From NCBI RefSeq assembly GCF_001194135.2, contig NC_069000.1:27511325-27555009 (forward strand): DNA of 43,685 bases. Reading direction: 5' to 3'. Position 1 is the first letter of the stretch; each line of letters begins with the position of its first letter. The notes beneath the pieces were generated by a model. That model was not told where the DNA came from. It was given only the letters and a program-made list of their open reading frames with translations, and made no database searches. Below, one piece after another: positions 9,981 through 41,237 of this stretch. The stretch comes from Octopus bimaculoides (Eukaryota). The position numbers and the translations under genes were made by a program.

Positions 9981-10041
9981 GTTCATCTCAATATCCATGG
10001 TGTTCATTAATAAATACTTATTAAGTAGCAAACAACTGAAG
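9981..10041 (+). CDS. SLC35C1: GDP-fucose transporter 1-like, coding exon 2 (G+FISISMVFINKYLLSSKQLK)
   Basis: 61 nt between a tttaccacag acceptor and a gtaagt donor. The only open frame gives SISMVFINKYLL, the conserved SLC35C1 TM1 motif (SISMVFLNKYLL). It ends in phase 0. Confidence 0.9.
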
Positions 10042-10536
10042 GTAAGTCATCTTCATCAGTTTTAGTTTCAGAACTTAACATTATCATATTCCCCCTCTCC
10101 TACTAATCACTATACAGTGCACCTGACCACTACATTTAATATATCCAACTGTGAAACTGTTCCTCTGTTCTACCCAGTGTGTTTCCTTAATTAATTGCAT
10201 GTCTACTCTGATATTTTCATTATTACTGGTTTTATTTTTGGGTTTTTTTAAATCAAAAATTAAACAAAAAGTAAGACAAAATATTTATATAATTTTTGCC
10301 AATTAATTGGACATTAAATACATAACCCAGTTCTGTTCAAGCTATCCCCTATACTCGGCAACCTACAGGTTGTTTTAAAAGCCCTAGCAAAATCAGTTAT
10401 ATAATGAAAATAATAGTGCAAAATACATTTAACAACAAAAAATATGCCAGCTAAAAAAACTTGCCCACTCACTTTTTGTTAACATTGTATGAAATATTCT
10501 TTCACCCTTTTTTGTTGTTAATATTGTATTAGATAA

Positions 10537-10737
10537 GGTGGCGAGCTGACAGAATCATTAGCATGCTGGGTGAAATGCTTAGCTGCATTTCATCCATCTT
10601 TATGTTTTGAGTTCAGATTCCTCCATGGCTGACTTTGCCTCTTGTCCTATCAAGATTGATAAAATAAGTACCAGTTTATGTAATCAACTTATCGCCTTCC
10701 CCAAATTGCTGGTCTGGTGCTAAAATTTAAAATCAAT
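10537..10737 (+). mobile_element. tRNA-SINE, second family
   Basis: GGTGGCGAGCTGACAGAATC head, GAGTTCAGATTCC B-box-like motif, and a central GACTTTGCC...GATAAAATAAGTACCAG block. Related copies at 20357 and 34205. Confidence 0.7.
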
Positions 10738-10939
10738 ATTGTGTCAGATACCTGTATAATAAAATAGGGAAATGTTCATCAAAAATAATTCTTGTTGTGT
10801 TTTTTTCTGTAAGGGATGCCATGTAGTTCATTGAATCAACTTTAATATAATATAAGGGCAGTGAAGGAAAAGGTGTAGAGTTTGAAAGGGAAACTTAGAG
10901 TGTGAAAATTGAATACATGGTTAGGGAGGGGAGAACTAA

Positions 10940-11545
10940 TGAGGGAAACAAAGTCTTGTTGTAGCTCAGGATCAGGCTCATGCAACCACCTCTATAAAGA
11001 AGTCTATGTACAAGATTACTGTAAGTGACAAGTGCCACTTTTGTGGGAAAGATGTTCAAAATGTGACGCATATTGTCAGTGGATGTGAGATATTTGCACA
11101 ATGTAAATACAAAGCCTACCATACCAAAATGAGTCAGCATGTTTGCTGGAACCTCTGTATGCTCTGTGGATTAGAAGTACATGAGAAATAGTATGAACAC
11201 AAAGGTCAAAGTCAGTCATGGAAAACAAACAGTGCTAAAATTCTGGACCAAACATTACATTGATGGTCAAAGAGTCCTACAAAACTTTCATTATTGTTAT
11301 AGCAATCCCAAGTGACCATAATTAGTAGCTGAGGTCAAAACGATTACCATCCTTGCAAAGGTGAAGGTAAAACTAGAAAGAATGTGGAATACCACTACTA
11401 ACATTATTCCTGTACTGGTTAGAACATTGGGGTCTGTCTCAGAAACTCTTACAATTCCTTGTTCAACTTAAAATCAAATATGATATCAGCACTATAAAAA
11501 AAGAACTGCCTTATTAGGCACTGTTCATATCATGATGGAGAGACC
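10940..11545 (+). pseudogene. R4/Dong-type non-LTR retrotransposon 3' end (zinc knuckle and restriction-like endonuclease)
   Basis: VAQDQA...CHFCGKDVQNVTHIVSGCEIFAQ..YKAYH...WNLC, then IAIPSD, ERMW, IPVLVRTLGSV and TALLGTVHI, with stops and frameshifts. Confidence 0.82.
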
Positions 11546-11599
11546 TTAAAGAAAATCAAGCCAGTTTTTAGACACCATGAGAAGCACAATGTTTAACTA

Positions 11600-12215
11600 C
11601 TCCCCTGCTCACTCAACTGGGAATCCTCCCAGTCTGTTGCTACTTGAAGTAGACAACTGCCAAGACAGACGTGAATAAGTGTGGTATTTAGAAATATAGC
11701 TCATTGGGCAGACTATGCAATCTTTGTCAAACTGGCCGAGCTTATCCACCACTTCATCAGCAGAAATCAGATTTTCACAATATTCAGTTCCCTGTCTAGT
11801 AGTAGTTTCTACCACCAAGGCCCAATGGATTGCTTTTGTGGCTTCATGTTTCAGCACATGCAACTTAAGTTGGATAATGCACCCTTTATGTTTCATGTTG
11901 AAGAACTGGTTGAGGACCATTCTTGCATCTAGCACATCTTTTATAATAATACTTCTCTTCTTTTCTATTATTCTCTGCACTTATATTGTTGCTAAAACTA
12001 ACAAATGCTTTTCTGATTTTTCCTTTTAGTGAAACTTATCACTTATTTTTGATGATGGCTCCTATCAATTCTTGCTTAACTAGTGCAGTAACCCAATATC
12101 TTAACGCTTTGTTCCTTGAAGGATGGATTTGTTTTCAGTTACTGGGTCCGTGTCAATTTGTCTTTTCTAAATTGGTTGTAAAGTACACAAATTTGTGGTC
12201 TGAGTAGCCACCTGC
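11600..12215 (-). pseudogene. Possible decayed LINE (end of APE domain and linker)
   Basis: Only GYSDHKFVYF near 12200 resembles the APE SDH motif. The rest could not be recognised. Confidence 0.25.
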
Positions 12216-12680
12216 CTAAACTGTGGGCAACTTATACAATGTCTAACTGTTAACCTGATGAAAACCCTAAATACAATCTAGATGACTCATGTAATTTCAC
12301 CAAGCCTGCATTGGCACATTAGGGAAATCAAAGCAAAACCTTCAAACACTTGAAAATGCTTGTGAAGTTTTGCAAGGTTTTTGCATCCCACTCCCCTTTA
12401 GGCTATTTCCACTTAATCATTGCATTTCAATCTTCTATTGATGAGAGGAGCCAAGCTTATTATAATATCTTCATCTGACTAGTTACTGATTATATACCCT
12501 TTTGCATATTTCATCTGCAATTTGTGGTTATTATGATTATTATGTAACTCCAGGCTTCCTACAAGAGCTGTTGAGCTGTGAATTTATATATTTTCTTATC
12601 TTATTCTGTACTATTCTGCATTTTTTGTATTCCATATTGGGTTGGCAAGAAAGTAATTTTGTTTTCCGCAAAATAGAGTT

Positions 12681-12917
12681 CATTATTTACATTGGATGGA
12701 TATGTGTCCTCATCTTGTTTTTTGTTACCATCACGTTTCAGCTGATTTACTCTCCAGCCTTCATCAGGTATCCTGGTGGAATTTTGAACCTAACTCCAGC
12801 TTCTCATTCCTAAGGTATTTTTTTGCTGATGTCATTATTTATTCAAGGCACTGCCTGGAATTGAACGCAGAATCTTGCGGTTAGTAGCCTGTACTCTTAA
12901 CCACTATGCTATATGCC
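12681..12917 (-). mobile_element. tRNA-headed SINE carrying a hammerhead motif
   Basis: Head 12917-12847 has A box TAGCATAGTGG, B box GTTCAATTCC and a GGCA/TGCC acceptor-like stem. It is followed by CTGATGA-GGCTG..CAGCT-GAAACGT at 12767-12733. Confidence 0.72.
12725..12773 (-). ncRNA. Minimal hammerhead ribozyme motif (probably inactivated copy)
   Basis: CTGATGA, a GGCTG/CAGCT stem II, GAAA and a palindromic ACGT stem III. Position 17 is G and stem I pairing is poor. Confidence 0.6.
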
Positions 12918-13189
12918 TGTGAGCAATTATAGAGTGAATTTTAGGGCTTATAAACCTAGTATTTTATCTTTTCTTAATACTGGTTCTCATATTCTACTCC
13001 TATTTGCACTAGATCTGCTAAGGTTATTATGTCCTAGCATATGTGCTGCCTCTTTAGTTTTTGCATTTTCCAGTGGTGTTCTCTGTCTAGTATTTTAACT
13101 TCATCCCACAGGAGAAGATGGTCTCTGTTCTTTAGAAACAAATTGTACATAATTTTGTTTACAGCTGTTAGTTCAGTGTCAATTTTAAC

Positions 13190-14194
13190 ATGGAATACAA
13201 AAACAAACATTTTCGCCATATTTTGATTTTTTTAATTTCCATAAAGGCAAGAAAGCTGCCGAGGCTCACAAAAAGATATGTGAAGTTTATGGTGTTGATT
13301 ACTTAACAGAATGCACATATCAGAAATGGTTTAAAAAATTCCGTTCTGGAGATTTTTCACTCAAAGATGATCAACATTCTGGTTGACCTACTGAAGTTGA
13401 TGACTGAATCAAAGCCATAACTGTGCAAGAGATTACAGAGAGATTAAATGTATCACTCACAACAGTTGAAAATCACTTAAAATGTCTTGGACTCTTTAAG
13501 AAGCTTGATATTTAGGTTCCGTATAAATTGAAAGAGGTTCACTTAACACAACGAATCAATATTTGCAATATGCATCTCAAATGCAATGAAATCAATCGTT
13601 TTTTGAAACAAATCATCACTGGTGATGGAAAATGGATTGTCTACAATAACATCAATCAAAAACGATCATGGTCCAAGTGTAATGAGCCAACACAGACCAC
13701 ATCGAAAGCTGAATTGAATCAAAAAGGTCATGCTGTCAATTTGGTGGGATTACAAAGGTGTTGTATATTTTGAGTTGCTTCCAGAGAACCAAACGTTCAA
13801 TTCAGATGTTTACTGTCAACAAGTGATGAAACTGGAGAAAGCAATCAAAGAAAAACGGTCAGAATTGGCAAATCATAAAGGAATCATGTTCCACCATGAC
13901 AATGCTAGATGACACACATCTTTGTTAACTCGTGAAAAATTATTGGAGCTTGGTTGGGAAGTGATGACACATCCACCATATAGCCCTGACCTTGCACCAT
14001 CAGATTACCATTTATTTCGAGGTTTGCAAAATTATTTGAATGATAAAACTTTCAATAATGATGATGATCTGAAATTGCACTTGCTTCAGTTTTTGGCTGA
14101 TAACGACCAGAAGTTCTATGAGCACGGAATCATGAAGTTGCCAGAAAGATGGCAAAAGGTCATCAAACAAAATGGAAAATATATAATTGATTGA
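13190..14194 (+). pseudogene. Mariner DD34D transposase pseudogene
   Basis: MEYKNKHFRHIL...KWFKKFRSGDFSL, TGDGKWIVYNN, HHDNAR, HPPYSPDLAPSDYHLF. Multiple stops and frameshifts. Confidence 0.93.
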
Positions 14195-14969
14195 AGTTCA
14201 TTCTTTGTATGAAGAAAAAAAACTGACTTTTATTTCACACTAAAAAACTGAAATTATCTTCTTGCCAACCCAGTATTTCTTTTAAACCTAACTGTGTTTA
14301 TCTCCATTACTACCTCTATATCTGCTTGATTTGGATTTCTCTTATAGCCAATTTTGACAGTATGGATCTTGCCCTGGATGAAGAATTCAGAGGTTAAGTC
14401 TAAATCCTTTTGAGTACTACTATGTGTTTTCTATACTGAGCATACCCAGCTCTCATTTATTGTCTGTATAATATATATTATTAATATGTATGCTTATATA
14501 CCCATAATTCTCCTTTGCTCATATGCAGGCAGATATAAACAACCATATATACACAGTCCTGTATGCATGCACTCAAACTTCCTTCAAAAACTGGAGGTGA
14601 AGGAAGTCAGAAGTGTAATGGGAGTGAATTGAAATTGCATGATTGTGCATGACTAGTACCTCCTTCAAAATATTCTTGACAGGAATTAAAAACATATTTA
14701 CCATTACTACTAGAGAGGCCCTCTACCAGTATCTCTGACAGAAACTGAAAGTTATTTACTATTAATACTTATAAACTAGGTAGATCGAGTTATAAAGAGC
14801 TCCTTAATAATATCTCTGACAGAAATTGAAAGTAATTTACCAAAGTACCTGTAAAAGAAAGAGAGACAGATAGACCAGTAGACACAATTTATATGTCAGA
14901 CAGAAATTTGGAGTTATATACCATTAATACTATAAGATATAGATAGAAAGAAAGTTGGATGATATTATT

Positions 14970-16915
14970 ATCCTTATGAGCTATTCAATTCTGCTGGAGA
15001 AATTAGCAGGGGGAATCCGTAAGGTACTGAAGGAAATTTTTAAGGGAATGATTCAGTCAACATATATTACAAGCAGCAACAATGGCAGATAGGCTCAAAA
15101 AAATAAAATAAAATTATTTGCTTTGCTTAGCTTAGTGGGAGGTAGGCAGATCAACATGACAGATTCAACTGCTCTGAGGTTAACCGAAGATCACTTGACG
15201 AAGTCCCTGCACATTATCCTGGGACCCAGGAGAACATATGAGAGTGATGGAAAGGCTATTAACCATTCACTATCAAGATTGCATTATGTTGACAGTCATC
15301 TGATTGTTAAAAGAATAAAGGAATAAAGATGGTTACAATAACAGGCTTGCTAATGTCTCCACTGCTGATCTTACACTATACTGCAACACTAAACCACATA
15401 AGTACATGCAACATGTAGTAAGGGTGCACTGGGTACATAGGTGGTGTGGGAGATGAAGAGTAAGGTGCTAAAACAAAGTTGGTGGGTTGTAGGCTGGCAC
15501 CTGCAATGGTGGAGTCCCAAGTGGTTATGGTAAGTGGTGATACTGACTGCCCAGTAGCAAGGGGTGTGCGTGCATGCTAAGGGTGGCAGTATTATTATCA
15601 GTTTTACCTAAGTTGTCAGGTGTAAATGTAGGAATGGCCTTCCCCTATTGTGTGCAGAGACCCACACGGCTGACCTTCAAGTTTTAGCATATCAGAAGCT
15701 TTAGAGTAAGTCAGCTTGACCATGTTCTGATTAAATATTTGGTAGAATCTCAAGGATGTCAAATTACTTCCTGATCACCAAGATTTTTACCGAACTGCTG
15801 AATGGGTGGTTCCGGTAGCAGCCATGCTTGGTCCTGTGTCTATTAGGGCTAATTGGAGTGCTGGAGGAAGGAGCAACCTGATGTATACACCCAGTGGGGT
15901 TACCACCAGTAGGTGCTGGAAAGTGATGTACAAGCATGTGACCTACAAAAGCATCCATCTGTTTACCTACTGTCCTTATTGTCACTAGCAGTGGTAAGAT
16001 GGTGACTGGCCCTATGTGTGGCTTGAACAGCTTCACTACAGGCCACAGCAACATTCAGATGTGGTCTCAGGATTGCATGTCAACACATGTACCTGGCCAG
16101 ACAGGCCACACAACCCCTCAAGTATCTTGACATTTGGGATTGGCCCACTTCTTTTCTATGTGGAGTGTACCCACACTTCTGGAGTGAGAATGTACTCTGG
16201 GGTGTGATGGTGTTGGTTGGCTACAAGGAAGGGTACATTAATGGATAGTTTAAGGGGGATTTCAGGGTTAGTATTCAATCTTCTCTTCAAAGACGCTACT
16301 GGCTGGGGCCTCATTATAATCCTGAGCAGGAAGATCTGCGCATTGACCTAGAGATTAGAGATTCTTATAGAAATGTTTTTCACTAGACTATTAACTATGG
16401 ATTTAGGAACAGGAGGAATGGTGTATATAGTGTAATGATTCATTGGGTTTGTGGTATAGGGAATATCACCCTGTACGTAAGTCTAGGAAGTTAATTACTT
16501 TCAGGCTGAAGTTCTTAAAGAACCTGTGCAACTTTTTCCTAATTCTCTCCAAAGGGATTGAAGTATAATTCACTGTAGCGAGGAATACATCATCCCTATA
16601 GGCACCCACTCCAAGGTCAGGGAAGTGGCAGCCCAGATCATGCACAAGGTACAGACTCACAAGGTACAGACCTACAAGGTACAGACCTACAAGGTACAGA
16701 CCTACAAGGTACAGACCCACAAGGTACAGACCCACAAGGTCAGTTACTTGAGCAGAGTCTGAGGAACATGTGGTGATGTCAAAATGATCCATACATCCCT
16801 TCCTGCACCACAGGTAGTCTTGGAAGAAAACAAAGGTATTCCTTACAGCCAGGATAACCTATAACTCAAGTTCAGGAATCTCAGTGAACTTTCTAGTGTG
16901 TTTGATTGAGGTATG
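14970..16915 (-). mobile_element. PLE remnant (Naiad-like): RT, linker and possibly decayed endonuclease
   Basis: VILAVRNTFVF...FDIT..SSDSAQVTDLVGLY...GAYRDD...INFLD (RT); YHKPNESLHYIH, NISIRISNL (thumb); NHPFSSSVK and QIFNQNMVKLTYS near 15700-15810. The part below 15700 is weakly supported. Confidence 0.8.
16643..16740. repeat. 15-bp minisatellite, 6.5 units of (C/T)ACAAGGTACAGACC
   Basis: Directly visible. Encodes (LVGLY)n in the PLE RT frame. Confidence 0.95.
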
Positions 16916-18217
16916 TTAAAAAATTATCTTACCTTTGGGCATAAAAAATACAGTTTTTATATTTAATCACTTTCGAAATACCCCCTCTTTGAGTTCACAC
17001 ACTTCTCCCAGCGGTTCTGCCACTGCTGGTAATACCTCAGGAATACCTTTCTTTGGAATGATATCAAGCTCTACTGTCACTTTTCTCATAACTTCCTCTT
17101 GCGACTCAAATTGCTTCCTTTTCAGATTAGGAAAGAGCCAGAAGTCACATGGTGGCAAGTTGAGATATTAGGGAGCCTGTCAAACAAGTGGTGCATTGTT
17201 CTTGACAAGGGAAACTTGGATTATGTAGGTGGAGTGAGTGTGCACATTGTTGTGGTGAAGTTGCCAATTTTTCACTACCCACATCTTCCTGTTTTTGACA
17301 CACATCTTCACAAAGGTAATGCATAACTTCCAGGTAGTATTACTTATTGATTGTTTGGCCTTGTAGCGCGTATTCATGATACAAAATACTGTGGAAGTCA
17401 AAGAAACACAATACCATGGGAGTCAACATTACTTTTAGATTTCTGCGAACCTGTCATGCTATTTTGGGCCTTGGTGATGACAATTGCTTCCACTGAGGAG
17501 ACTGGAACCTGGTTTCCGGTTGTAACCATAAACCCATGTCTCCTCAGCAGTGATGATGGTCTTCATGAAGTCTGGATTGTGTTTTGCAAAATCCAGCATA
17601 TCAGTGATTTGAATGTGAAGTTGCTTCTGCTGCTCCACCAGCACCTTGGGGGCAATTTTACCAAGGACATGCACAGACCTTCCATTGAAATGGAATGCAC
17701 TGATCCTGTGCTTATTCACACTTGATGAGCAATTTCTTGGCTTGTTACGTGATGGTATTTCATGACTATTTGCCAAACCTTCTCAATCAGCTTCTTGTTT
17801 TGGCTTGTAGATGGCCTGCCTGAGCATGCCTCACTCTCTATTGAGGTGTGGCCATGTTTGAAATAGTTTTACCACTCCTTGATCTGAGTTTTGCCCATGG
17901 CATCATCACCAAAGGCTTGCTGAATCTTCTGGATGGTTTGAGCTTGAGTATCATCAAGCTTTTCGCAAAACACGATGTAATATCTCTGCTTGATGCATAC
18001 GGCCATCTTGCATAAAAGCAAAAATCTGATGAGCACACACTACATGTCTGTACTCTAGGCATAACAGCTAGAAACTGACACAGCCTATCAGTGTGAAAGT
18101 TTCCATTCATGCATAAAAAGGGTGGCATCATCTTTCACCCAAAGGATTTTGCCCACACAGAATTGAATTAGTTTGGGCAGGGAAAAATAAAGTTAAATAC
18201 TTTTTGACCACACCTGA
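16906..18217 (-). mobile_element. Mariner element (second subfamily) with decayed TIRs
   Basis: Ends GAGGTATGTTAAAAAATTAT and its inverted counterpart CAGGTGTGGTCAAAAAGTAT. Transposase remnant at about 18006-16963: QRYYIVFCEKL...SGRPSTS, TAEETWVYGY, LHHNN, PCDFWLFPNLK, YFESD. Confidence 0.88.
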
Positions 18218-18346
18218 TATCATGCTGGCCCTCTGCATCTACTGATTGCATCTATAATGTGACACGTGTTTAGAATACTGAAATATATGTAACAGATGAA
18301 TTAAAAGAGTACCAAGTCAATGCTCATGCTCTTTTTCTTATATTTT

Positions 18347-18383
<37 letters not shown>

Positions 18384-18411
18384 GGGTATGCCTGGGATGT
18401 CTATAATTATA

Positions 18412-18909
18412 CAAGGGTAGGCCGAAAGTTCACAGGCTGAATATGAAGGAGTGTTGTTGGAGCTGTAAAAACTTGTCATGCATTAATTTCAACTTTCCTG
18501 CATTGTTTCTTTCCAGATAAATTGACATCTGACTGTTCAAAGAAGACTTCAAAAAAAGTAACTGGTAGTGACTTCTCTTGAAAATCAACAAGATTTGGCA
18601 TCATGGTGTTATCAAATACCTGCAGGTTTAACCGCCAAGGACATTCATGCTGACATGGTTGCTACATTAAGTGATGCTGCTCCAGTTTTATTAACAATGC
18701 AAAAGTGGGCAGCTGAATTTAGGAGGGGAAGGAATGGCTTTGAACTGGTTGATCACCCTCCCTATTCTCCTGATTTGGCCCCATCTGACTATCATCTGTT
18801 CCCCAAAATGAAAGAAAAACACTTAGCTGGGAACCAGTATTGCAGTGATGATGACATTATATCTGTTGTTAGCAGGTCCATCAACCATGTAGAAGCTTTT
18901 TTGGCTTGA
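18412..18909 (+). mobile_element. Internally deleted mariner (third subfamily)
   Basis: A TA+CAAGGGTAGGCCGAAAGTTCA left end. ORF 18568-18909 joins QKWAAEFRRGR directly to FELVDHPPYSPDLAPSDYHLFP. No right TIR was seen. Confidence 0.85.
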
Positions 18910-19276
18910 ATAACATTAAATAGAGAGCAATACTGAGATGAGATTAGAGGAATCAATGTTGTAGTAGATCTCTATTCAATAAGGTGTCCAAAGGTATTGT
19001 TGCCAGACTCTGTTCTCAAAATGTTTTATTGTCCTTGACATTTTTTCTTTTTGACATTTTTGTGTGTAAAAGGTAACTATTATTTTCCCATTCAGAGGCT
19101 TATTTGTAATTGACTTAATTTTCACTTAAATAATAAAATACTTATGTATTCAGTAATGATGCATCCAGCTTTAATCCAATACATCATATAAATCATTCAA
19201 AACATATGTTTCTTTAAAATCTTATTGATTGCATTTAATAATCTAATTTGATATTTCTTTTCTTTTTCTTCTTCAG

Positions 19277-19417
19277 TTAGACGCTCCATTATTCATCACA
19301 TGGTACCAATGCTTTATAACTGTGATACTTTGTGCTGTTTTCAGCTTCATCAGTTTTTTTTTACCAAATCTCGTTAAATTTCCATCAATGAAACTTGAAC
19401 TAAAGATATGCCGCAGT
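19277..19417 (+). CDS. SLC35C1: GDP-fucose transporter 1-like, coding exon 3 (LDAPLFITWYQCFITVILCAVFSFISFFLPNLVKFPSMKLELKICRS)
   Basis: 141 nt, phase 0/0, with a tctttttcttcttcag acceptor and gtatgt donor. LDAPLFITWYQC is the motif that directly follows NKYLL in SLC35C1. The next expected exon (VLPLS...NNLCL) was not found in the window. Confidence 0.92.
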
Positions 19418-19791
19418 GTATGTTAGTCTTCTTTTTGTTTTGTTTTGTTTTTTTTTTCTTTTTGAACATTCCTGTTTACTTTTTATTGTTTTTCTCTTTT
19501 TTTTGTAATTATATATCCATGTAAATTGCATAAGTACACACTTGCTGAAACTAATTTCTAACACAGGCACAAAGCTTCAAATTTTGTGGAGCAGGAACAG
19601 TCAACACTTGGTAGCATATAGTTTATCACATCTCCCATCCTCCAGAAATATTAAGTAGACATGATTAGGCAAAATTTGATCTCAGAAATGTATGAGAATA
19701 TAACTAAATACCACAAAACATTGTACTTGCTCTATTAATTCTACTAATTCACTGCTCTAGAGTGCACACACACACACACACAAAACACACA

Positions 19792-19833
<42 letters not shown>

Positions 19834-20305: not shown

Positions 20306-20356
20306 ATATGAAATGATGATAAGAATCATTTATTAGACAAAATTATAGATTGTACT

Positions 20357-22269: not shown

Positions 22270-22315
<46 letters not shown>

Positions 22316-22316
<1 letters not shown>

Positions 22317-31100: not shown

Positions 31101-31390
31101 ATATACCCAGAATATAATATAATACAAACAAATTCACAAGGGAGATAATCATTCAAAGGTGCCATCCAAGAATAGTGCTCCTTGATTTCTTGTTTTCTTT
31201 ACGAGATATTTTTGTGAATTCCCAAGATTTTCTGCATTTACATCCAAAATGGAGATGAACACCATTCTTTCATGTGATCAGCTTGAAAAATTGTTAAACT
31301 ATTAAGATATTTTTCTTGACATGAAACCAATATGAAGAGTGGTTAGGAGTCCATACAAATCAAAAATTATAGTTAAGAAAAAACATGGGA

Positions 31391-31692
31391 ATATATTTTA
31401 GAGAATGTTTAATAAAATTTAACCAGTTTCAATGTATCCATCTTATCAAATATTAGAAAGAATTTTGGTGGGTGTCAGAGAGAAAAAACATTTTTTGCTG
31501 GGTTTCACAGTTTGTACCCATATTTGAGTTCTTAATCTTTCATTAAGAACTCAAATAGGGGAACAAACTGTTAAACCCTGCCAAAAATGTTTTTTCTCTC
31601 TGATCCACCAAAAACTTTTTTCTAATATTTCTAACATTTGATAAGATATGTCAAGACTGGTTATATTTTGTTAAACATTCTCTAAAATATAT
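31391..31692. repeat. ~300-bp foldback palindrome (MITE-like)
   Basis: Arms 31391-31536 and 31542-31692 around a 5-nt loop (CTTTC). The innermost 16 bp are perfect and the outer parts pair with scattered mismatches and indels. Confidence 0.92.
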
Positions 31693-31726
31693 AGTTTTGT
31701 GCCTTTTCCAACTTTTTATTTTTCAA

Positions 31727-31814
<88 letters not shown>

Positions 31815-31815
31815 T
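31727..31815. repeat. (TA)n microsatellite
   Basis: Directly visible. Many other (TA)n, (CA)n, (GA)n and (AAT)n tracts occur, e.g. 5661-5698, 8530-8562, 19765-19830 and 22276-22315. Confidence 0.95.
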
Positions 31816-32539
31816 TATATTCTTTAAGTTCATCCATGGAAACCGTTTTTGAGTATGCATATAAAGGCTTCTATTTTATTACGTTGACTACAGCCTAATG
31901 ATACCAACCTGCAACAGCAGTTTTATGAGGTTGTACTGAACTGTGCCAATATAATGTAGGATAAATATAATAATAATAATCCAAGGATGGAATTTATAAA
32001 TATTTTAAAGTATTGCTACACACATTTCCACATGTTTCTTATGATCACGAACCAATCCATAGTATCATAGTTTATGCATTCATTTCATCAGGCACTATGA
32101 CATTAAAGTTGGAAGCAAGGAATGTATATAACTGAAAGATGTTTATCAATTTCCACTAATCAAAAGGTTCATTGGGGTATGCGGGCAGTTCTGTGTGTAT
32201 TCATTCGGGAAGAATAGAAGATGGTGGAAAGAGAGAAAGGAATGGTAATGATAAAGGAGAGGAAGGTGTTTGGTGAGGCTAGACTTGTTTTGATATTTGT
32301 GTACAGATGTTGGGATAGGTAGTATGTTTTATTGGTTTGACTTTAGTTACAGCAGGCATTCCCTCAATGAATTTAGATGTTGTAGGATCAGGAAGCCACT
32401 TACTTTGGTGTTGAAGTTCATTGTCTGAGTTGAGAAATGTTCCCCTAAAGGGTCCTTTTAGTTACTTATGGTGGTACAGTGACATAGCATAAGGAAATAA
32501 TGAGTTTTTCTTTTTGTTTAGTTCATGTTTCTATTCTTC

Positions 32540-33600
32540 TCTTGATCTGTTAGATGTTGATGAAGGTTAGTGTTTCTGTTTCATAATGTTCTGTTTGAAT
32601 TCTAGGAAGGATGCCTTGATCTTATGTCTAATTGATACAATTACTTCAGAATGTCTATTAATTATGTTTTCCCTGGATGTGCTGATCTCCCGGGTTTCCA
32701 CTGAGCATAATTTCCATACTTGTGATGTTCTACTGTATGGACTAGCATTTTTTATTGTGGACCAGTTGGTTGTATGCTCCACTCCATTTCATTTCTGCCC
32801 CCAGATAAGGTTAGATAATGTGCAGTGTTTCCAGTTCCACCAACATTGCACATATTTTTGTGCATCCATCTTCACTTCACATTTGTAAACCACGCTCTTT
32901 ACTATGCAGTTGTTATTAAACTTGTACTCATTTTTCCATTTGAAGTTACATGTTATATTATTTTTTCTGATTCTGTAAGCAGAGGTATTATTAATACTCA
33001 CATTCCTTCTTCCTCTTGCAACAGTGTTCTTATTTTCTTTAGGTATAGATTACACTGCCAATGGTATGGCGCTGTTTGGACCCCTTCTTGTTATGGAGGA
33101 GCTTTTATCCTTCATATTTGCAACCATCCCATTGTTATTTTGTTTTGATCTGCAGTTTTTCCGTAAGCCCCCTCTAATTTTATTTTATTGAGTTTTCTGT
33201 TTATTTAATTTGTGTATGTAGTATTCTGGATTGTACAATGTCGCATATGCTAATTTCACCTTATGTCTGCTGATAATTTTGTGATGTTTGCTAGATTTAG
33301 AGAAGTGCCTATCTAATGCTGAAAAGAATTCCAGGTTTATTTTGGATTTTATTTGTGAATTGAAAATTGGGTTAAACCAAATAATTTCATCACTCTTTAT
33401 TTTACTATTTCTTTTAATGGATCTATTGGATTTGTTACTGCAATTTGTTTTATCTGTTTCTACTATATGCTTAATATTTCTATCTATGTCTATTGGTCCC
33501 GTCATTTCAACCCTTGCTCGCAACTTCCTGGGTTCTGTTTGATATCTATCCTTCTTAGTGTTGCAGATGCATTTTTCCCATTTTGGTCCCTATCACATTT
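32540..33600 (-). mobile_element. PLE remnant (Naiad-like linker and GIY-YIG)
   Basis: IIWFNPIFN...F...LDRHF...HHKIISRHKVKLAY, then NNCIVKSVVYKCEV, LSNLIW, WSTIKNASPYS...KLCSVE and INRHSEVI. Confidence 0.82.
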
Positions 33601-33831
33601 ACTGTTTTTTTAGAGTCTGGTATTCTGTGGTTATTTATAGGATTATCTCTAATATTAATAACACTGTCTGGATATTAAATATTAATTCTGTACATATATT
33701 ATTCTATCCGTATACCTTGCCCTAGCTAGTCCTGAGTTGTAATATCCGTTCATCTGCAGATAGTCTGTATATTCAGTTTGACACACTTCTTGGGATGTTT
33801 CACAGCAAATGTTCCAGATGTGCAGCATATC

Positions 33832-33960
33832 AATTGGTATTAAGAAGGATATCCAGCCAAAACAAACAATAGAACCTGGAGCAGTTCTCTGGCTAACCAA
33901 CTCTTGTCAAACTATCCCACCCGTGACAGCATGGAAGATGGGTGTTAAATGATGATGATG
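33832..33960 (+). mobile_element. Diverged (ATG)n-tailed repeat 3' end
   Basis: TTAAGAAGGATATCCAGCC...CAGCATGGAAGATGGGTGTTAAATGATGATGATG. Confidence 0.6.
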
Positions 33961-34204
33961 AATAGCACTGGCTACAGTGAAATTTTATCCCAAATGTAAC
34001 ACAAAAACAAGTCATATTTCAAAGTTGAAAGAAGGAAAAGCTGTTTTCATCTGGAGTGATACGTAAAAGAGAGTTCTATAATTAAAACAGTAAATTTAAA
34101 TTAAAATTTAGGAAGCCAATCTTACCTTTTTTTCACAAATATGACCAGCTTGCTAAATGTCTACCAAATGAACTGAATAATGAAGTTTAGAGAGTAGCAA
34201 TATA

Positions 34205-34394
34205 TGTGAGCTGATACTCTGGGCAAAACATTTATTTCGTCCATCTTTACATTCTGAGTTCAAATTCTGCTGATGGCAACTTTGCCTTTCACCTTTTTAG
34301 GGTTGATAAATTAGTACTAGTTGAACATGGGGTTGATCTAATCAACTTACCCCATCCTCCAAACTTGTTGGTGTTGTGCCAAAATTTGAAACCA
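34205..34394 (+). mobile_element. tRNA-SINE, second family
   Basis: GAGTTCAAATTC, AACTTTGCCTTTCA...GTTGATAAATTAGTAC and GTGCCAAAATTTGAAACC, as in 10537-10737. Confidence 0.7.
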
Positions 34395-34884
34395 TGACAT
34401 TTGTAAACTACATTCTTTACCATGCAGTTGTTATTATATTTGTATTCATTTTTCCATCTGAAGTGACATGCTATATTATCTCTTCTGATTCTGTAAGTAA
34501 AGTTATTATTAGCGAGTTAGTGTTTGCGTGCATGTGTATGTGTGTGCTTTAATCACAAGTACAAAGGCTTGGAGCTGACAGGTCATTGTAGGGGTAAACA
34601 ACTTCTATCTATCCTTTATATAGAATATTTTTCAGAAAGCTTTCGCTTTGTTATTTTTGTTTTTTCATTATTATTCTTTTCTCCATCCATCTGCTTGTTT
34701 TATTCCCAAGGGAAACAAACTGCTTTTTGGACAACTGGATAGTGGTTACTTTAGGGTTGTGTATCTGGTGTTGCTGAAGAAATCTACTAAAAGATTTCTT
34801 TTAGTAGATTTTTTTAAAGAAATAGATAGGGGAAGGCCCTATTCAGTAACCGGATCATTATATCTGAAGTTGTGATTCGCTAAA

Positions 34885-35300
34885 ATATTATGCACATGAT
34901 AAAAAAAATTTGATCAATCAAGAACTAGCTTCAACAACAATTTCATCTTTGCATGCCTTTCTCTGAGCCTATCTGTCACTATAAATTCAGCACACCTTAG
35001 CTACTTTGACAGACACCATAGGAGACAACCAACAGAGATAGTTGACAGCAGTTGACAGCAGCTGACAACACAACAGCCAGAAGACAAAACCAGAAGACAA
35101 AAGACATTAGAAGTCAGTAGCACAGCAAGCAGCTAACTACAATGAATGATTGGTAAGAGCAACACAAAGACTAGCAGCTAATGTTTTGACTACTGTGACA
35201 ACCACATCAACTGAAAAACAATAACATCCAAACTCTATGTTTTGTTATTTGTAGTGACATTTGTTTTTGTTTACAGATAGAATATTTTGTTTATCAAAAA
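34885..35300 (+). repeat. ~410-bp direct repeat, copy 1 (copy 2 at about 36445-36855)
   Basis: Colinear shared blocks include CCTTAGCTACTTTGACAGACAC, GACATTAGAAGTCAG and TTTTGACTACTGTGACAACCACATCAACT. Confidence 0.85.
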
Positions 35301-35778
35301 TGTCAACAGATATCAATGTTCTTCATACAAGTGGTAACACCGAACCCCAAAGAAAGAATACGATACAGCCTAGAAACAACTCACCAATAACTCTGTCTAT
35401 AGGACACCACCACTACACAGCTTACCGATACCGACATGTCTCCGAGAAATTTCTCTCTCCAACTGACTTTTTCCTGCCATTGTAGCCTCACTGTGCTACC
35501 ACCATCTCTGTCATCAATACACTGGTAATCATGTCCTAAACACGCTTCTTAGCAGAATATCAAATATTTTCAGCAACACCATCATGATGCCAGTATACTA
35601 CCTGTAACGTCATCAATATCAGTACCTTGATGCCTCCATCTCACAAATGAGATATGTCAATGCGTGTTTCCTCCAGGGCAATACCACAACCTTACTTTGG
35701 CCACCAATGTTCTTAAGCTCAGGAATTACTGGATAGGCTCACAATACCAACCAACTGATATTCAATGCAAATACACAT

Positions 35779-36182
35779 GGGAGCAGGAGTGGCTGTGTGG
35801 TAAGTAGCTTGCTTACCAACCACATGGTTCCGGGTTCAGTCCCACTGCGTGGCATCTTGGGCAAGTGTCTTCTACTATAGCCTCGGGCTGACCAAAGCCT
35901 TGTGAGTGGATTTGGTAGATGGAATCAGAAAGAAGCCCGTCGTATATATGTATATGTATATATATATATATGTGTGTGTTTGTGTGTCTGTCTTTGTCCC
36001 CCCAACAACACTTGACAACCGATGCTGGTGTGTTTATGTCCCCGTAACTTAGCGGTTCAGCAAAAGAGACTGATAGAATAAGTACTAGGCTTACAAAGAA
36101 TAAGTCCTGGGGTCGATTTGTTCGACTAAAGGCAGTGCTCCAGCATGGCTGCAGTCAAATGACTGAATCAAGTAAAAGAGTA
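35779..36182 (+). mobile_element. Full-length tRNA-SINE with CORE-like central block and internal microsatellite
   Basis: A-box-like TGGCTGTGTGG, B-box-like GGTTCAGTCCC, CTTGGGCAAGTG block, internal (TA/TG)n and a CAGTCAAATGACTGAA..AAGTAAAAGAG tail. At least four family members occur in the window. Confidence 0.88.
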
Positions 36183-36444
36183 TATTCAAATGAATATGAA
36201 TATGCAACAATCAACTTGTGTACATGCATATGACTATATATGAGTCACTCAGTCACACATTTAGATGCACATACATGTATCTGCATCAGATCTTCTTTCC
36301 CAGCATTTTTACAATTATACTCTGACCTACTGTTCATTTATTTATTTAATTGTTTGTTTTCAAATTCCTGGTTTTGCAGTCATTTGCAACATTAGCTTGT
36401 ACAGTACTTCGTGCATAAGACAGCACTGCACTGTGCTTTAAAAG

Positions 36445-36855
36445 CACACACATGATCGAGAAAATTTGACCAATCAAGACTTTGCTTAGAACTGGCCCCA
36501 ACAACAATTGCATCTTTTCACACCTTTCTCTTTGAGCCTTTCCATCATTATAATTTCAGCAAACCTTAGCTACTTTGACAGACACTAAAGGAGACGGCTA
36601 AGAGAGACAGTGGAAAGCAACTGACCCAAATTTACAGCACAAAGGCAATGAACATCAGAGGACAAGAGACATTAGAAGTCAGCAGCTAATGACATTGAAC
36701 GATCAGCAACAACACAACAACCAGCAGCTAACCTTTTGACTACTGTGACAACCACATCAACTCAAGAACAATAATATCCAAACTCTATCAATGTTTTGTC
36801 ATTCATAGTAACATTAGCTTTTTGTTTATGGAAATAAATATTTTATCAAAAATCA
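36445..36855 (+). repeat. ~410-bp direct repeat, copy 2
   Basis: Diverged colinear copy of 34885-35300. Confidence 0.85.
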
Positions 36856-37044
36856 TAACTGGTGACCTTTGACGCTAGAAATGGCAGTCAGCACTTGTAG
36901 CACAGGCAAGCTTGCAGTGTTTAGGTGTCACTACAGGCAGAGGTCGGAGCCAATATTTGAGAAGGGGGGGGTATTTTCCCCTTCACCACCCTATGGGTGG
37001 GGGGTAATTTGCACGTCGCATCAAAACATTTGAGGAAATGAAAA

Positions 37045-37292
37045 TGAGGTGTGTGAATTATTCAGCTTCTTCCCAATTTTCTTTTTCACATGGTTTTGAA
37101 TTAATTTTATAACTTTGAGATTTTTATGAGGTAACTGCTATTTTTGGATTGATATTGAAGGGTTGATGTGAGAAGGGTTGATGTGTGAAGGGTTGATGTG
37201 AGGGCTGATGTGTCCAGATATGGACAGTTTGAACGTAAAGCAAGCAGAATATTTTGGCTAGATATGACCAGCTTAAATGCTTAAAAGGTTAA
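37045..37292. mobile_element. Possible decayed TTAA-ended (piggyBac-like) MITE
   Basis: The right end TAAATGCTTAAAAGGTTAA resembles a CTAAAGGG+TTAA terminus. The left TIR could not be recognised. Confidence 0.3.
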
Positions 37293-37829
37293 GAAATAGC
37301 CTGTTTTCAGAAAGGAAACAAATCAAGGTGTATAGATTACCCAAAATTCCTCTACATTCAGAAAATTTTTCAAAATAAATTCCCATATAACCCTAAGCTA
37401 CACCATCTAAAATGTACCTCTTAGAAACTTTCATTAAAAACATGCATTTTTCAGAAAGTTACAAAGAAACAAAGTCAACAGCTGGTATGGTTTCCTCATA
37501 ACATTCAGAAAAATAAGTATTGCTTAATGAAATTTTTAACAAATATCTTTCAGATGGTGTAGATTACAATTCTATCAGAATAAATTGGTGAGCATGTCTA
37601 AATACATACTGACACAACTTTTTCAAAATTTTCATGTTTTATTTTGTAGATATACATGTGTTCCTTTAGACAATCTTTTGGGATTGATACTGAAACCAAA
37701 ACAGTACAAGAGAGAACGGAAATGGACTCGCTCAACATACTGTAATTATGCCAATCTGTACACTAGATTATTTAGCCTCAGGTCCAGTATAATCAAATTG
37801 GTCAAAAGTATTTGTTGTGGGCATAACGA

Positions 37830-38330
37830 CAGATGTGTACCCCACCCCCAAATTTGTTGCCTCATAACTTCCAAAAAAATGGATACTTTTTAGTGAAATT
37901 TTCAACAAATACTGCTTAGATTGCTGTGGATGCAGAATATATAGGGATTTACAGGAAAGAAATTTTCAAAGGAGTTTCGGGAAATTCACACAATCCGAAT
38001 TTTTTCCCTCATAACTTTCAGGAAAATGGATATCTTTTAATGAAATTTTATACAAATACCTTTCAAATGGCATAGATTACGATTATAAAGAAATTTGGGT
38101 AAATTTTTCCGAGGTAGGGAGACGAGTTTAGAAAAAACGGAATTTCAGATCAGGAAGACCAAATAAATTTTGACGGAGATTTTTCCTATTTTTTATTTCA
38201 CCACAGCCTACGAAATGATGGGAGTCGGGGGGCAGATTTTATATATATTTTTTTTTTTTACCGAAAAGGCTCCTCCCATGGTTTTGAAGTGCAAAAAAAA
38301 AATTTTGGATCTAGTCTTTCTCATTCGCAA
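37830..38330 (-). mobile_element. Helitron-like family B fragment (same orientation as 22316)
   Basis: Colinear with 22430-22960. Confidence 0.7.
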
Positions 38331-39419
38331 AATGAGCCCCACTTAATTTTGCTTAGATTGATTTCAGCTTTGGTGTATTGATGCAACTCTGCATCTTGAT
38401 TACAATCAACCAATTACTTTATCTCGTAAATTAAAGAATCTGATGTTATTTGGAATTAAAGTTGGGAACTTTGGGTAATTTTAGCCAATCAACAGACAGC
38501 GTGGCATTAGCAGCTTGTTACCATGCCAACCGCAATGGGTTGTGGTTCACTGTTATCTGTGCCACTGTTGTCTAAAACAAAACATGTGGGTGAAATCACG
38601 TTTTGTTGTGTGTTAGTATATTACATATTTTTCTGTACTTCTGTGTGTTAGTATTTTTCTGTGTTAGTATTTTTACATATTTTTCATTTCATATGTTTTT
38701 GGGACTCATTGACTCAGCTGGATTTATGATTTCACTAGGTTTAATTATATTCATAAAAAAAATTAATTAGGAGTATTTTTTAAACTGTTAGCTTCACATT
38801 TCAACAGCTTAACTGAAATTTAGTCCACATAACAGGAACCAAGAAGGATATCGTGGAACAGAGAAACTGTGGGTGATACAGATAATTTGACATTATTTTT
38901 GAATTCTGTATGCCAAAACATATAAGATACAAGTATTCTTTTCCTTGCGGCAAATTCTTTGTTCCCCAGTGTTATTCTTATTGTAGTTTACAAATCCAAG
39001 CAGGAAAACGTTACTCAAATTTGGAGTTTAGGAGACACATGCATATTAATGATGCACATAATTACATGGCAGGTATACATAATATGGAAGTACGCATGAA
39101 GTAAACACATGCAGACAAATACATTAATATAACAAATTTTAAAAAATAATAAAAACATACAATCAATGAAGAGACAAAAGAAACAGTAAGATGATACATG
39201 TTAATTTTATTAGATATTTCTGTTTCTTTAAAAACATACAATGAAATTAGGTATTTCTGTTTATTTAGAAACCTACAATGAACGCTAAACTATAAATTTC
39301 ACTGAGTACAGCCTTAAAATTGACACCGCTCCGCTAAACGCAGAAAATTTCTCTCTCGCTATTGGCTAAAAATACAGTGTTTTCGATTAGATTTAGAAAA
39401 GTATTATTTCTAATAAACC

Positions 39420-39870
39420 TCTAACTGTTTTTCTCCAATTTTTTTTCTCCACAACATAATACCTTCAAAGCAATGAGACTGGAATATACATTATTATAGT
39501 CGATTTTCAGATTTTTTTTACTTCCTTTTAAAAAATGCATATTTTGCGAAAGAAAAAAACTAAATCCAAAAATTTGGCCAAAATCAGCCCGGAGTGGGAT
39601 GAAGGGGGTGAGGACATACAAAAAATTTTAAAAACTCTATTTTCATATAAAGATGCCCCTCTCCTATCATTTCGAAGGCTGTGATGGAAAACAAATTTTC
39701 CGAAACTCTTCTCCCCATTCCCTCGGAAAAATTCTTTCCCATAAATCCCTATATACTCTGAATCCACAATATCTAAGCGGTATTTATTGAAAATTTCGTT
39801 AAAAAGAATCCATTTTTCTGGAAGTTATGAGACAAAGTTAGTGGGATACACATCTGTAGTTATACCCAGT
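39420..39870 (+). mobile_element. Helitron-like family B fragment, opposite orientation
   Basis: The reverse complement matches blocks of 37830-38330 and 22430-22960. Confidence 0.7.
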
Positions 39871-41145
39871 TGTGAACACCAGCGTTAAGAGGAATCGGCT
39901 GCATTTCGGATCAGGGAGGTTTGGTTGCTATTTCTAGCAGAGTGACCACATAGAAGCCCCTCGTTGGTTCGTAAGCAAGTGTATATGCGTTGTAGGGGCT
40001 TCAAACTACATTAAATGCTGTTAACTAGTGACGCAGCTAATAGGGGATCGTGAGGAGCGACCACTATCAGTGTGCACATTTTTCAAAATTGGCGCTTTTT
40101 ATAAAATGTATAGTCAATTATTTGGTATCACGGCACCTTTTCTTATGTGCTTGCTCCCCTTAACTTTAGAATCTGGCTGTGCCCTTGTTGTTAACTCCAA
40201 GTCGACCCTGGTTGAGCAAACCCATGACGAGTGCTCCAGAAACAATGAACATCCTTCCCTTAAATTATACCTTGTCATATTAAAAGAAAAAGAGGGTGGC
40301 ATACTAAAGTTGCTCTAATTATATCATGTGAGAAAACGACCAAGTTCGAAGCTGGAATGCTTTTAATGAAGTTTACTCCCTCGCGGCTGACATGGATATT
40401 ACAACGTTTATAAGGTGCCTATACTGTCAGAGAGCACTCAAATGTATGTTTTGTTAGTTAAAACTTAATATTCATTTCGTTTCGTCCCAGGTCTCCTTTA
40501 ATTCAATAGAGCTGTGACCAAATACGTTCCAGCCGTGACCCTTTCAGGATTACATTATCCAACATGCCCTTTCTTTAAGACGATAGTGAGGTTCTCCTTG
40601 TTGACACATAAAAGTTAATGCATATGTATGCAGGTTCATATTCATTTGGGTAACATAATTACAATACATCCCACACACCCGGCAAACATGTAATGTTTTA
40701 CACTTGTGAGATAGACAAGAAAAGCGAAGGAAAGAGATGCATTTCAATAGCATTAAGTTCAAATTGAAAACTTTCTAACATGAATTATTATTTCTCGTTA
40801 TTTCCGCCATTCCATCACTTGTGTGTTGTGTGTAGAATACTAACTTACATCTCAACAGAAATGAAAACATTGAATGATTAACAAAGGAAAAAATTCAGAC
40901 TAGAAAAATCAAAATAGAATAACAAGCGTGCGCCGAAGGAAAGTTGTTCTATCTTGAAATAACCCCATCTCTCATAAATTTGAAACCGTTTGCAAACGTA
41001 TCATAGAAGAAAAAAATCAATTACAATTGAGAACGTTTTTAAACGTTAACTGCTGAGATTTTGACTAATTTAAAGTTAAGTGTAACCAAATTTAATGTTA
41101 AAAGATTAAGTGAATAAAAGAAAGCGATAATTAGTCGTTACTTAC

Positions 41146-41237
41146 CAATAGATGGCCACCACCGAGGCGATTTTCAGCGACTTATAAAAAAACGACTCCA
41201 TTCGCTTATCTTTGTTGTCATAAACGTGGAGCTTCAT
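41146..41237 (-). CDS. SLC35C1: GDP-fucose transporter 1-like, first coding exon (MKLHVYDNKDKRMESFFYKSLKIASVVAIY+TG)
   Basis: Minus strand ATG at 41237, 30 codons plus TG, then a perfect GTAAGT donor. KIASVVAIYW matches the start of TM1 of SLC35C1/Gfr proteins. The phase-2 end TG is completed to TGG (W) by the first G of exon 9981-10041. The neighbourhood is richer in CpG than the rest of the window. Confidence 0.88.

What the first reader, a model, noticed from the sequence alone, without database searches (positions are those of the whole stretch)
9981..41237. SLC35C1 exon 1 is antisense to and downstream of exons 2-3
Seen: exon 1 (minus, 41146-41237, ends TG|GTAAGT) and exon 2 (plus, begins G) join exactly to give the conserved YW-FISISMVF, but they face each other. 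Exons 2-3 lie in block 3230-25279, bounded by two exactly 100-N gaps. Flipping that block puts all three exons in order on the minus strand, with an intron 1 of about 22.6 kb. The most likely explanation is a mis-oriented contig that would break the annotation of this gene. Alternatives are a real inversion allele, two inverted paralogs, or opposite-strand trans-splicing as known for Drosophila mod(mdg4) and lola.
Basis: partly seen in the sequence, partly recalled or inferred. Interest (0 to 1): 0.8.

Follow-up and report, generated by a model that had tools for sequence, protein, structure and literature searches.

The report
Flipped scaffold piece splits SLC35C1 gene
The first exon of the GDP-fucose transporter gene faces the next two exons, most likely because a 22-kb assembly piece joined by two unsized 100-N gaps was put in backwards, so this is probably an assembly error.

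Summary
Exon 1 (41237-41146, minus), exon 2 (9981-10041, plus) and exon 3 (19277-19417, plus) have canonical splice sites. Joined, they give an open 98-aa N-terminus of SLC35C1 that aligns without gaps to relatives. A relative's 110-kb contig has an intron at exactly the same codon position, with both exons on one strand, 650 bp apart.

Each exon occurs once in the window. There is no second exon 1 and no exon 4.

Exons 2-3 lie in block 3230-25279. This is the only unit bounded by exactly 100-N gaps, the kind that scaffolders such as HiRise insert without sizing.

The other gaps carry signs of continuity. Two 10-N gaps have exact 80- and 49-nt overlaps, and one sized gap has same-strand (GT)n on both sides. 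The two 100-N joins have none. Both block ends are cut inside repeats.

Flipping the block gives a collinear minus-strand gene with an intron 1 of 22,617 nt.

No read-level or same-species data could be obtained, so mis-orientation is inferred, not shown (about 0.88). Rivals are a second gene copy, a real inversion, and opposite-strand trans-splicing of the eri-6/7 kind (about 0.02). Interest is low.

The parts
41146..41237 (-). SLC35C1 coding exon 1: ATG, 30 codons plus 2 nt, donor TG|GTAAGT
   Evidence: Best of 145 candidate sites, score 63 against 32. Matches P0001 residues 11-35.
9981..10041 (+). SLC35C1 exon 2, 61 nt, acceptor cacag|G, donor AAG|GTAAGT; encodes (W)FISISMVFINKYLLSSKQLK
19277..19417 (+). 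SLC35C1 exon 3, 141 nt, acceptor ttcag|T, donor AGT|GTATGT; encodes LDAPLFITWYQC...KICRS
   Evidence: E = 4e-11 to human SLC35C1 within the window.
10042..19276 (+). Intron 2, 9,235 nt, inside the block and unaffected by any flip
   Evidence: It contains a decayed mariner at 13528-14194.
3230..25279 (.). Scaffolding unit, 22,050 positions, that carries exons 2-3. It is the candidate mis-oriented piece.
   Evidence: Bounded by the only two 100-N gaps. Its internal 10-N gaps at 7877-7886 and 23912-23921 are bridged by exact 80- and 49-nt overlaps.
3130..3229 (.). Unsized 100-N scaffold join on the left of the block
   Evidence: No overlap or shared sequence between its flanks in either configuration.
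25280..25379 (.). Unsized 100-N scaffold join on the right of the block
   Evidence: The only similarity nearby is a dispersed SINE-like copy 355 nt into the right side, in inverted orientation.
25203..25279 (-). SINE-like repeat copy cut off by the block end; at least 70 nt of the element are missing
   Evidence: Other copies lie at 21734-21848, 25702-25826 and 33872-33961.
3267..3446 (+). C-terminal tail of a GIY-YIG-like transposable-element ORF, cut off by the block start
   Evidence: 50-58% identity to 4394-4477 on the minus strand. Its core is absent from both possible neighbours.
25380..41145 (-). Proximal part of intron 1, downstream of exon 1 on the minus strand. It contains no SLC35C1 exon.
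   Evidence: It has sized gaps at 26622-26823, 27836-28165 and 29078-29146.

Best explanation
This is an ordinary, cis-spliced SLC35C1 (GDP-fucose transporter) gene whose 5' end has been scrambled by scaffolding. The window comes from a short-read assembly whose original scaffolds have sized gaps and unmerged overlaps. A later scaffolder joined those scaffolds and wrote 100 N at every join without sizing it. The 22-kb unit 3230-25279, with exons 2-3, was inserted between its neighbours in the wrong orientation relative to the unit that carries exon 1. In the real chromosome, exon 1, a roughly 22.6-kb intron 1, exon 2, a 9.2-kb intron 2 and exon 3 lie in order on one strand. Exon 4 onward lies beyond the window.

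Shown: the exons, their phases and splice sites, their single copy in the window, the gap pattern, the lack of continuity at the two joins, and the collinear arrangement with the same intron position in a relative.

Inferred: that the orientation is an artefact, and which of the two units is the wrong one.
For: 1. Only the two gaps that bound the block are exactly 100 N. [quoted passage not shown] 2. Internal controls: the 10-N gaps have exact 80- and 49-nt flank overlaps, and the 69-N gap has same-strand (GT)n on both sides. The 100-N joins have nothing in common.
3. Both block ends stop inside interspersed repeats, a SINE-like copy and a GIY-YIG-like TE ORF tail. The rest of each repeat is in neither neighbour. 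This is typical of short-read scaffold ends.
4. The three exons are intact, with consensus splice sites and matching phases. They align without gaps to relatives.
5. In a relative's 110-kb contig, exon 1 ends TATTG|GTAAGT and the next exon starts cag|GGTTG. That is the same codon position and phase, on the same strand, 650 bp apart. In another relative the region is one uninterrupted ORF on genomic contigs.
6. A single flip restores a collinear gene with plausible intron sizes (arithmetic).
Against: There is no direct evidence. No read, long molecule, transcript or second assembly of this organism could be consulted. The flipped configuration also shows no overlap or repeat continuity at the joins, so the sequence itself favours neither orientation. 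I did not establish which scaffolder made this assembly; 100 N is also the generic convention for gaps of unknown size. Exon 4 is not seen in 1-3129, so the flipped model cannot be checked by a fourth exon.
Confidence: 0.88

Rival explanations
1. The arrangement is real, but the exon 1 seen here does not serve exons 2-3. The two parts belong to two copies (inverted paralogues or a partial duplication). The true exon 1 of the plus-strand copy lies upstream of the window, and the later exons of the minus-strand copy lie elsewhere.
For: Introns here are long (9.2 kb, and 22.6 kb in the flipped model). An exon 1 more than 10 kb upstream of exon 2 would therefore fall outside the window, and I could not look there. 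No exon 4 is seen on either side.
Against: Each exon occurs exactly once in 43.7 kb, and no exon-2-like sequence lies in the 15.8 kb downstream of exon 1 on its strand. Exon 1 has an intact ORF and a consensus donor in exactly the phase that exon 2 needs. This rival needs two unseen gene halves where one flip suffices.
Confidence: 0.05
2. A real inversion of about 22 kb in the sequenced individual, polymorphic or recent, separates exon 1 from the rest and leaves the gene broken or hypomorphic.
For: The assembly as given shows this arrangement. The breakpoints would lie in unsequenced, repeat-rich DNA, where recombination between inverted repeats could occur.
Against: All three exons and six splice signals are intact, so any inversion would have to be very recent. 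The 400 nt next to the two joins share no inverted repeats in the geometry an inversion needs: A-end against D-start z = 0.6, B-start against C-end z = 0.0. The supposed breakpoints coincide exactly with the two unsized scaffold joins, which is what an artefact predicts. From general knowledge, loss of SLC35C1 causes a severe glycosylation disorder in humans.
Confidence: 0.04
3. The orientation is real and the gene works by opposite-strand trans-splicing. One pre-mRNA, from the minus strand, carries exon 1 and its donor. A second, from the plus strand, carries exon 2 onward. The spliceosome joins them, as in C. elegans eri-6/7 or Drosophila mod(mdg4) and lola.
For: The exon 1 donor and exon 2 acceptor are consensus sites in matching phase. 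One direct-repeat pair, 5769-7234 against 28166-28938 at 87-88% identity, lies in the geometry that would let the two opposite transcripts pair. In eri-6/7 direct repeats do this (PMC11414722).
Against: That repeat is a dispersed SINE-like element that also occurs inverted, 6000-6222 against 35961-36182, so it is expected by chance. No mod(mdg4)-type TSA core lies on the exon 1 strand, and there is no 9-nt U1-complementary site anywhere in the window. Relatives are collinear. Such trans-splicing is extremely rare (general knowledge), and the arrangement coincides with two unsized scaffold joins.
Confidence: 0.02

Closest known systems
Orientation errors of small scaffolds in proximity-ligation (Chicago/Hi-C, e.g. 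HiRise) scaffolding
   Same: A small unit of 22 kb lies between two unsized 100-N joins, with no sequence continuity at the joins. Flipping it restores a normal gene. The literature states that HiRise writes 100 N per join (PMC5545040) and has a raised rate of orientation errors because the pairs carry no strand information (PMC4772016).
   Different: I could not establish which scaffolder made this assembly, nor view contact maps or reads. The match is to the pattern only.
C. elegans eri-6/7 (opposite-strand trans-splicing after inversion of the 5' exons)
   Same: The 5' exon(s) lie on the opposite strand from the rest of the gene. Relatives have a single collinear gene. One direct repeat is present in the geometry that would allow pairing.
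   Different: In eri-6/7 the orientation is verified in a finished genome, the fused mRNA is observed, and about 930-bp direct repeats flank the inverted exons closely (PMC11414722). Here the orientation rests on two unsized joins, no mRNA was seen, and the only repeat is a dispersed SINE-like element many kilobases from the exons.
Drosophila mod(mdg4) and lola trans-splicing
   Same: The 5' exon and the 3' exons lie on opposite strands, with consensus donor and acceptor sites.
   Different: Those genes have many alternative 3' exons and a conserved U1-binding TSA core in the last 5' intron (PMC4387717). Here there is one constitutive junction inside a conserved transmembrane segment, and no TSA-like motif.
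Human SLC35C1 (GDP-fucose transporter 1, FUCT1_HUMAN)
   Same: The window's exons 1-3 align with residues about 32-117, sharing the invariant VV..YW..S..VF.NKYLL and P.F.T..QC motifs.
   Different: Only the first 98 residues are in the window. The N-terminal tail is shorter than in the human protein. Exon structure differs: relatives merge exons 2 and 3.

Membership tests
SLC35C1 / GDP-fucose transporter (nucleotide-sugar transporter, TPT fold) | Sequence homology to a named SLC35C1 over the N-terminal transmembrane region | tested here: met
   tblastn of human SLC35C1 finds exon 3 at E = 4e-11 (46% identity), exon 2 at E = 8e-4, and exon 1 weakly at E = 0.36. The query was confirmed to be NP_060859.4. 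There are 22 invariant columns in a gap-free alignment.
SLC35C1 / GDP-fucose transporter (nucleotide-sugar transporter, TPT fold) | Pfam TPT domain (PF03151) | tested here: inconclusive
   The 98-aa fragment alone matches no Pfam family at E <= 0.01, because most of the domain is encoded outside the window. Homologue P0002, 60% identical, carries PF03151.
SLC35C1 / GDP-fucose transporter (nucleotide-sugar transporter, TPT fold) | Gene structure shared with relatives (intron after the second base of the Trp codon of YW) | tested here: met
   L001 reads ...CTCTATTG|GTAAGTAA and tttcag|GGTTGTT. The window reads ...ATCTATTG|GTAAGTAA and cacag|GTTCATC.
Scaffold mis-orientation artefact | The unit is bounded on both sides by scaffolder-made joins of unknown size | tested here: met
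   100 N at 3130-3229 and 25280-25379. No other gap is 100 N.
Scaffold mis-orientation artefact | No sequence-level evidence for the given adjacency or orientation at the joins | tested here: met
   No overlap, shared microsatellite or continued repeat at either join. In contrast, the 10-N and 69-N gaps do show continuity.
Scaffold mis-orientation artefact | Reversing the unit restores a collinear, conserved structure | tested here: met
   After the flip, exons 1, 2 and 3 are in order on the minus strand with introns of 22,617 and 9,235 nt. Relatives are collinear.
Scaffold mis-orientation artefact | Spanning molecules (long reads, strand-defined mate pairs, PCR) show the other orientation | not testable with these tools
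No same-species contigs are on record.
Opposite-strand trans-splicing, mod(mdg4)/lola type | Conserved U1-binding TSA core (GGURAGUAGAGUG) or another strong pseudo-5' splice site in the 5' intron | tested here: not met
   The only match with up to 2 mismatches is on the plus strand at 35799, inside a SINE-like repeat, and 1.1 matches are expected by chance. CAGGTAAGT has no match in the window.
Opposite-strand trans-splicing, eri-6/7 type | Direct repeats that make the two opposite-strand pre-mRNAs complementary near the splice sites | tested here: inconclusive
   One pair exists, 5769-7234 against 28166-28938 at 87-88% identity. It is a dispersed repeat that is also present inverted, and it lies 2.7-4 kb from exon 2 and 12 kb from exon 1.
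Opposite-strand trans-splicing (any type) | Fused mRNA observed together with a verified genomic orientation | not testable with these tools
   No RNA or DNA reads were available. No same-species protein or transcript is in the protein collection.
Real inversion by recombination between inverted repeats | Inverted repeats at the two breakpoints | tested here: not met
   In the 400 nt next to the joins, A-end against D-start (inverted) gives z = 0.6 and B-start against C-end (inverted) gives z = 0.0. The breakpoints themselves would lie in the unread gaps, so the test is partial.

The most novel reading that the evidence does not exclude
The orientation is real, and SLC35C1 is expressed in this animal by trans-splicing two pre-mRNAs transcribed from opposite strands. 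That would be an eri-6/7-like rescue of an inverted 5' exon in an essential housekeeping transporter, outside nematodes and insects.
Probability: 0.02. Interest if true: 0.8.

Novelty: not a real feature. Interest (0 to 1): 0.08.

Why it matters
As an artefact it matters only in practice. Gene predictors cannot join exon 1 to exons 2-3 in this assembly, so SLC35C1 would be annotated without its start or split into fragments. No protein of this organism containing these exons is in the protein collection. That fits a broken annotation but does not prove it.

The pattern is an easy automatic flag for assembly curation. It is a small unit between two 100-N joins that carries exons facing their partner exon, next to gaps that do show continuity.

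If the orientation were real, this would be a rare case of opposite-strand trans-splicing or a natural knockout of a glycosylation gene. Nothing here favours that.

Tried and rejected
- **Read-level test:** I did not try to get around this.
- **Same-species contigs:** two window ORFs were not on record in the look-up of encoding contigs. The mariner search found nothing above 84% identity, so this genome is not in that collection. Exact 30- and 33-mers from the two outer gap edges gave 0 hits in metagenome contigs.
- **First protein search:** exons 1+2 alone (51 aa) found no candidates.
- **Base-composition skew:** noisy (±0.2 per 2 kb), and in any case it cannot separate an artefact from a real inversion, because each unit is transcribed in its exons' direction under every model. 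Dropped.
- **Overlap or repeat continuity across the 100-N joins:** nothing, as given or flipped. The SINE cut at 25279 and the GIY-YIG-like ORF cut at 3230 continue in neither neighbour.
- **Other searches that found nothing:** Rfam at gathering threshold 0 hits and tRNA scan 0. The PDB has no relatives. Pfam finds nothing on the 98-aa fragment.
- **Organism:** not established. From memory the SINE-like repeat with a (GAT)n tail and the AT-rich, microsatellite-rich sequence resemble octopus genomes. No tool confirmed this, and a literature search gave nothing usable. The conclusion does not depend on it.


Full report
**What is in the sequence**

The window has ten N-runs. Only two are exactly 100 N, at 3130-3229 and 25280-25379. 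The others are 10, 843, 10, 10, 202, 330, 69 and 808 N.

- Exon 1 runs from 41237 to 41146 on the minus strand. It has an ATG preceded by an in-frame TAA, is 92 nt long and ends TATTG|GTAAGT.
- Exon 2 is 9981-10041 on the plus strand, 61 nt, cacag|GTTCATC...CTGAAG|GTAAGT.
- Exon 3 is 19277-19417 on the plus strand, 141 nt, ttcag|TTAGAC...CGCAGT|GTATGT.

The phases fit: 92 + 61 + 141 = 294 nt, or 98 open codons. The product is MKLHVYDNKDKRMESFFYKSLKIASVVAIYW / FISISMVFINKYLLSSKQLK / LDAPLFITWYQCFITVILCAVFSFISFFLPNLVKFPSMKLELKICRS.

**Is it SLC35C1, and is it more than chance?**

The exact-sequence look-up confirmed that this query is NP_060859.4 / FUCT1_HUMAN, GDP-fucose transporter 1.

The joined 98-aa peptide finds P0001, a marine eukaryote transcript catalogue entry, at 60% identity and E = 1.4e-27. 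It also finds P0002 (Rotaria, carries Pfam TPT PF03151), P0003 and P0004. The five-sequence alignment has no gap at either exon junction and 22 invariant columns.

I scanned every TGGT site in both strands that has an open 18-codon frame upstream. The real exon 1 scores 63 against the relatives' exon 1 peptides, and the next best of 145 sites scores 32. With six different protein queries, each exon is found once. There is no second exon 1 and no exon 4 or later anywhere in the window.

**Relatives**

P0004 lies on a 110-kb contig, fetched as locus L001. There exon 1 ends ...CTCTATTG|GTAAGTAA and the next exon begins tttcag|GGTTGTT. That is the same position and phase inside the Trp codon as in the window. 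The exons are 650 bp apart on the same strand and are followed by four more SLC35C1 exons on that strand.

P0003 is a single uninterrupted ORF on four marine metagenomic contigs, and it covers the equivalent of exons 1-3.

The exon 1-exon 2 junction is therefore an old, conserved intron position in an ordinarily cis-spliced gene.

No exon touches a gap. One search gives the following.
- The 10-N gaps at 7877-7886 and 23912-23921 have left and right flanks that overlap exactly by 80 and 49 nt. These are unmerged contig overlaps, so the sequence is continuous and in the same orientation.
- The 69-N gap at 29078-29146 has (GT)n on both sides on the same strand, which also fits one orientation.
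- The 202-N gap has (TA)n on both sides, which is uninformative.
- The 330-N gap has (TA)n on the left and a SINE-like repeat on the right.

The stretch with exons 2 and 3, from 7887 to the block end at 25279, is therefore sequence-continuous. The contig with exon 1 (29147-42077) is tied to its left neighbour.

The two 100-N joins are different. They show no overlap, no shared microsatellite and no continued repeat, either as given or with the block flipped.

The block end at 25279 is cut inside a SINE-like element whose other copies lie at 21734-21848, 25702-25826 and 33872-33961. The block start at 3230 is cut inside the C-terminal tail of a GIY-YIG-like transposable-element ORF. The missing parts of both repeats are in neither possible neighbour. 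These are the ends of short-read scaffolds that stopped in repeats, and the true gaps hide at least 100-300 nt.

**Interpretation**

The gap pattern shows two layers of assembly. The older layer has sized gaps and 10-N placeholders. The later layer wrote a fixed 100 N at each join.

[quoted passage not shown] It also states that proximity-ligation pairs have no defined relative strandedness. [quoted passage not shown] I did not establish which program made this assembly, and 100 N is also the general convention for gaps of unknown length.

Either way, the orientation of the 22-kb unit relative to its neighbours is the weakest statement in the window. It is also the only thing that has to change to obtain a normal gene. 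After the flip, exon 2 falls at 18468-18528 and exon 3 at 9092-9232 on the minus strand. Intron 1 is 22,617 nt and intron 2 is 9,235 nt. Exon 4 must lie more than 9 kb further on, beyond the window's left end.

The data cannot say whether the block or the right-hand unit is the misplaced one.

**Rivals**

- **Two copies or an unseen exon 1 upstream.** This cannot be excluded from a 43.7-kb window with introns this long. It needs two unseen gene halves, and nothing supports it.
- **A real inversion.** It would have to be very recent, because all exons and splice signals are intact. Its breakpoints would coincide exactly with the two unsized joins. The 400 nt next to the joins carry no inverted repeats in the required geometry.
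- **Opposite-strand trans-splicing.** I tested two sequence features known from the documented cases.
  - The mod(mdg4)/lola TSA core, GGURAGUAGAGUG (PMC4387717), has no match on the exon 1 strand. Its one 2-mismatch match is on the other strand, inside a repeat, at chance frequency. The perfect U1-complementary 9-mer is absent from the window.
  - eri-6/7 uses direct repeats that make the opposite transcripts complementary (PMC11414722). One direct pair exists here, 5769-7234 against 28166-28938 at 87-88% identity. It is a dispersed SINE-like element that also occurs inverted (6000-6222 against 35961-36182) and lies kilobases from the splice sites. It is expected by chance in this repeat-rich sequence.

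**What could not be done**

Window ORFs are not on record in the assembly index. The best hit to the window's mariner ORF is 84% identical, so this genome is not in the protein collection. Gap-edge 30- and 33-mers have no match in metagenome contigs. The conclusion is therefore an inference from anatomy, controls and prior knowledge, not a demonstration.

**Verdict**

A second copy is about 0.05, a real inversion about 0.04 and trans-splicing about 0.02. This is not a biological feature. Interest is low, apart from its use as a curation flag for this assembly and as a warning for the annotation of this gene.

Noticed in passing
window 7877-7886 and 23912-23921: The 10-N gaps are false gaps. 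The 80 nt (first gap) and 49 nt (second gap) before the Ns are repeated exactly after them, so the assembly contains small artificial duplications where overlapping contigs were not merged.
   Followed up: yes
window 13528-14194 (+): A decayed mariner (Mos1/SETMAR-like) transposase lies inside intron 2, split over three frames. Its last 90 aa are up to 84% identical to proteins that carry Pfam PF01359 or are named Mariner Mos1 transposase.
   Followed up: partly
window 138-602 (+), 4301-5066 (-), 3267-3446 (+), about 30636-30808 (+), about 32654-32911 (-), about 34403-34429 (-): Several diverged copies of a transposable-element ORF have a GIY-YIG-like nuclease motif (NVVY..C...YIG). From memory this resembles Penelope-like elements. 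The Pfam GIY-YIG match is below threshold (E = 0.0014, 19.3 bits against a cut-off of 22.6).
   Followed up: partly
window 21734-21848, 25702-25826, 33872-33961 (+) and 25203-25279 (-): A SINE-like repeat family ends in a (GAT)n tail. The copy at about 21430-21830 is preceded by roughly 60-nt internal tandem units. From memory it resembles a common octopus repeat, but this was not verified.
   Followed up: partly
window 25425-25564: A roughly 140-bp near-palindromic element with terminal inverted repeats, MITE-like, lies just right of the second 100-N join.
   Followed up: no
window 5769-7234 vs 28166-28938 (direct) and 6000-6222 vs 35961-36182 (inverted): Copies of another dispersed repeat, 87-91% identical, each abut an assembly gap (6223-7065 and 27836-28165). 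This suggests these gaps are caused by this repeat plus the adjacent microsatellites.
   Followed up: partly
L001 9256-15353 (+): An unnamed 110-kb ENA contig carries a complete-looking multi-exon SLC35C1 gene of an unidentified eukaryote. The window's exons 2 and 3 are fused into one exon there.
   Followed up: partly
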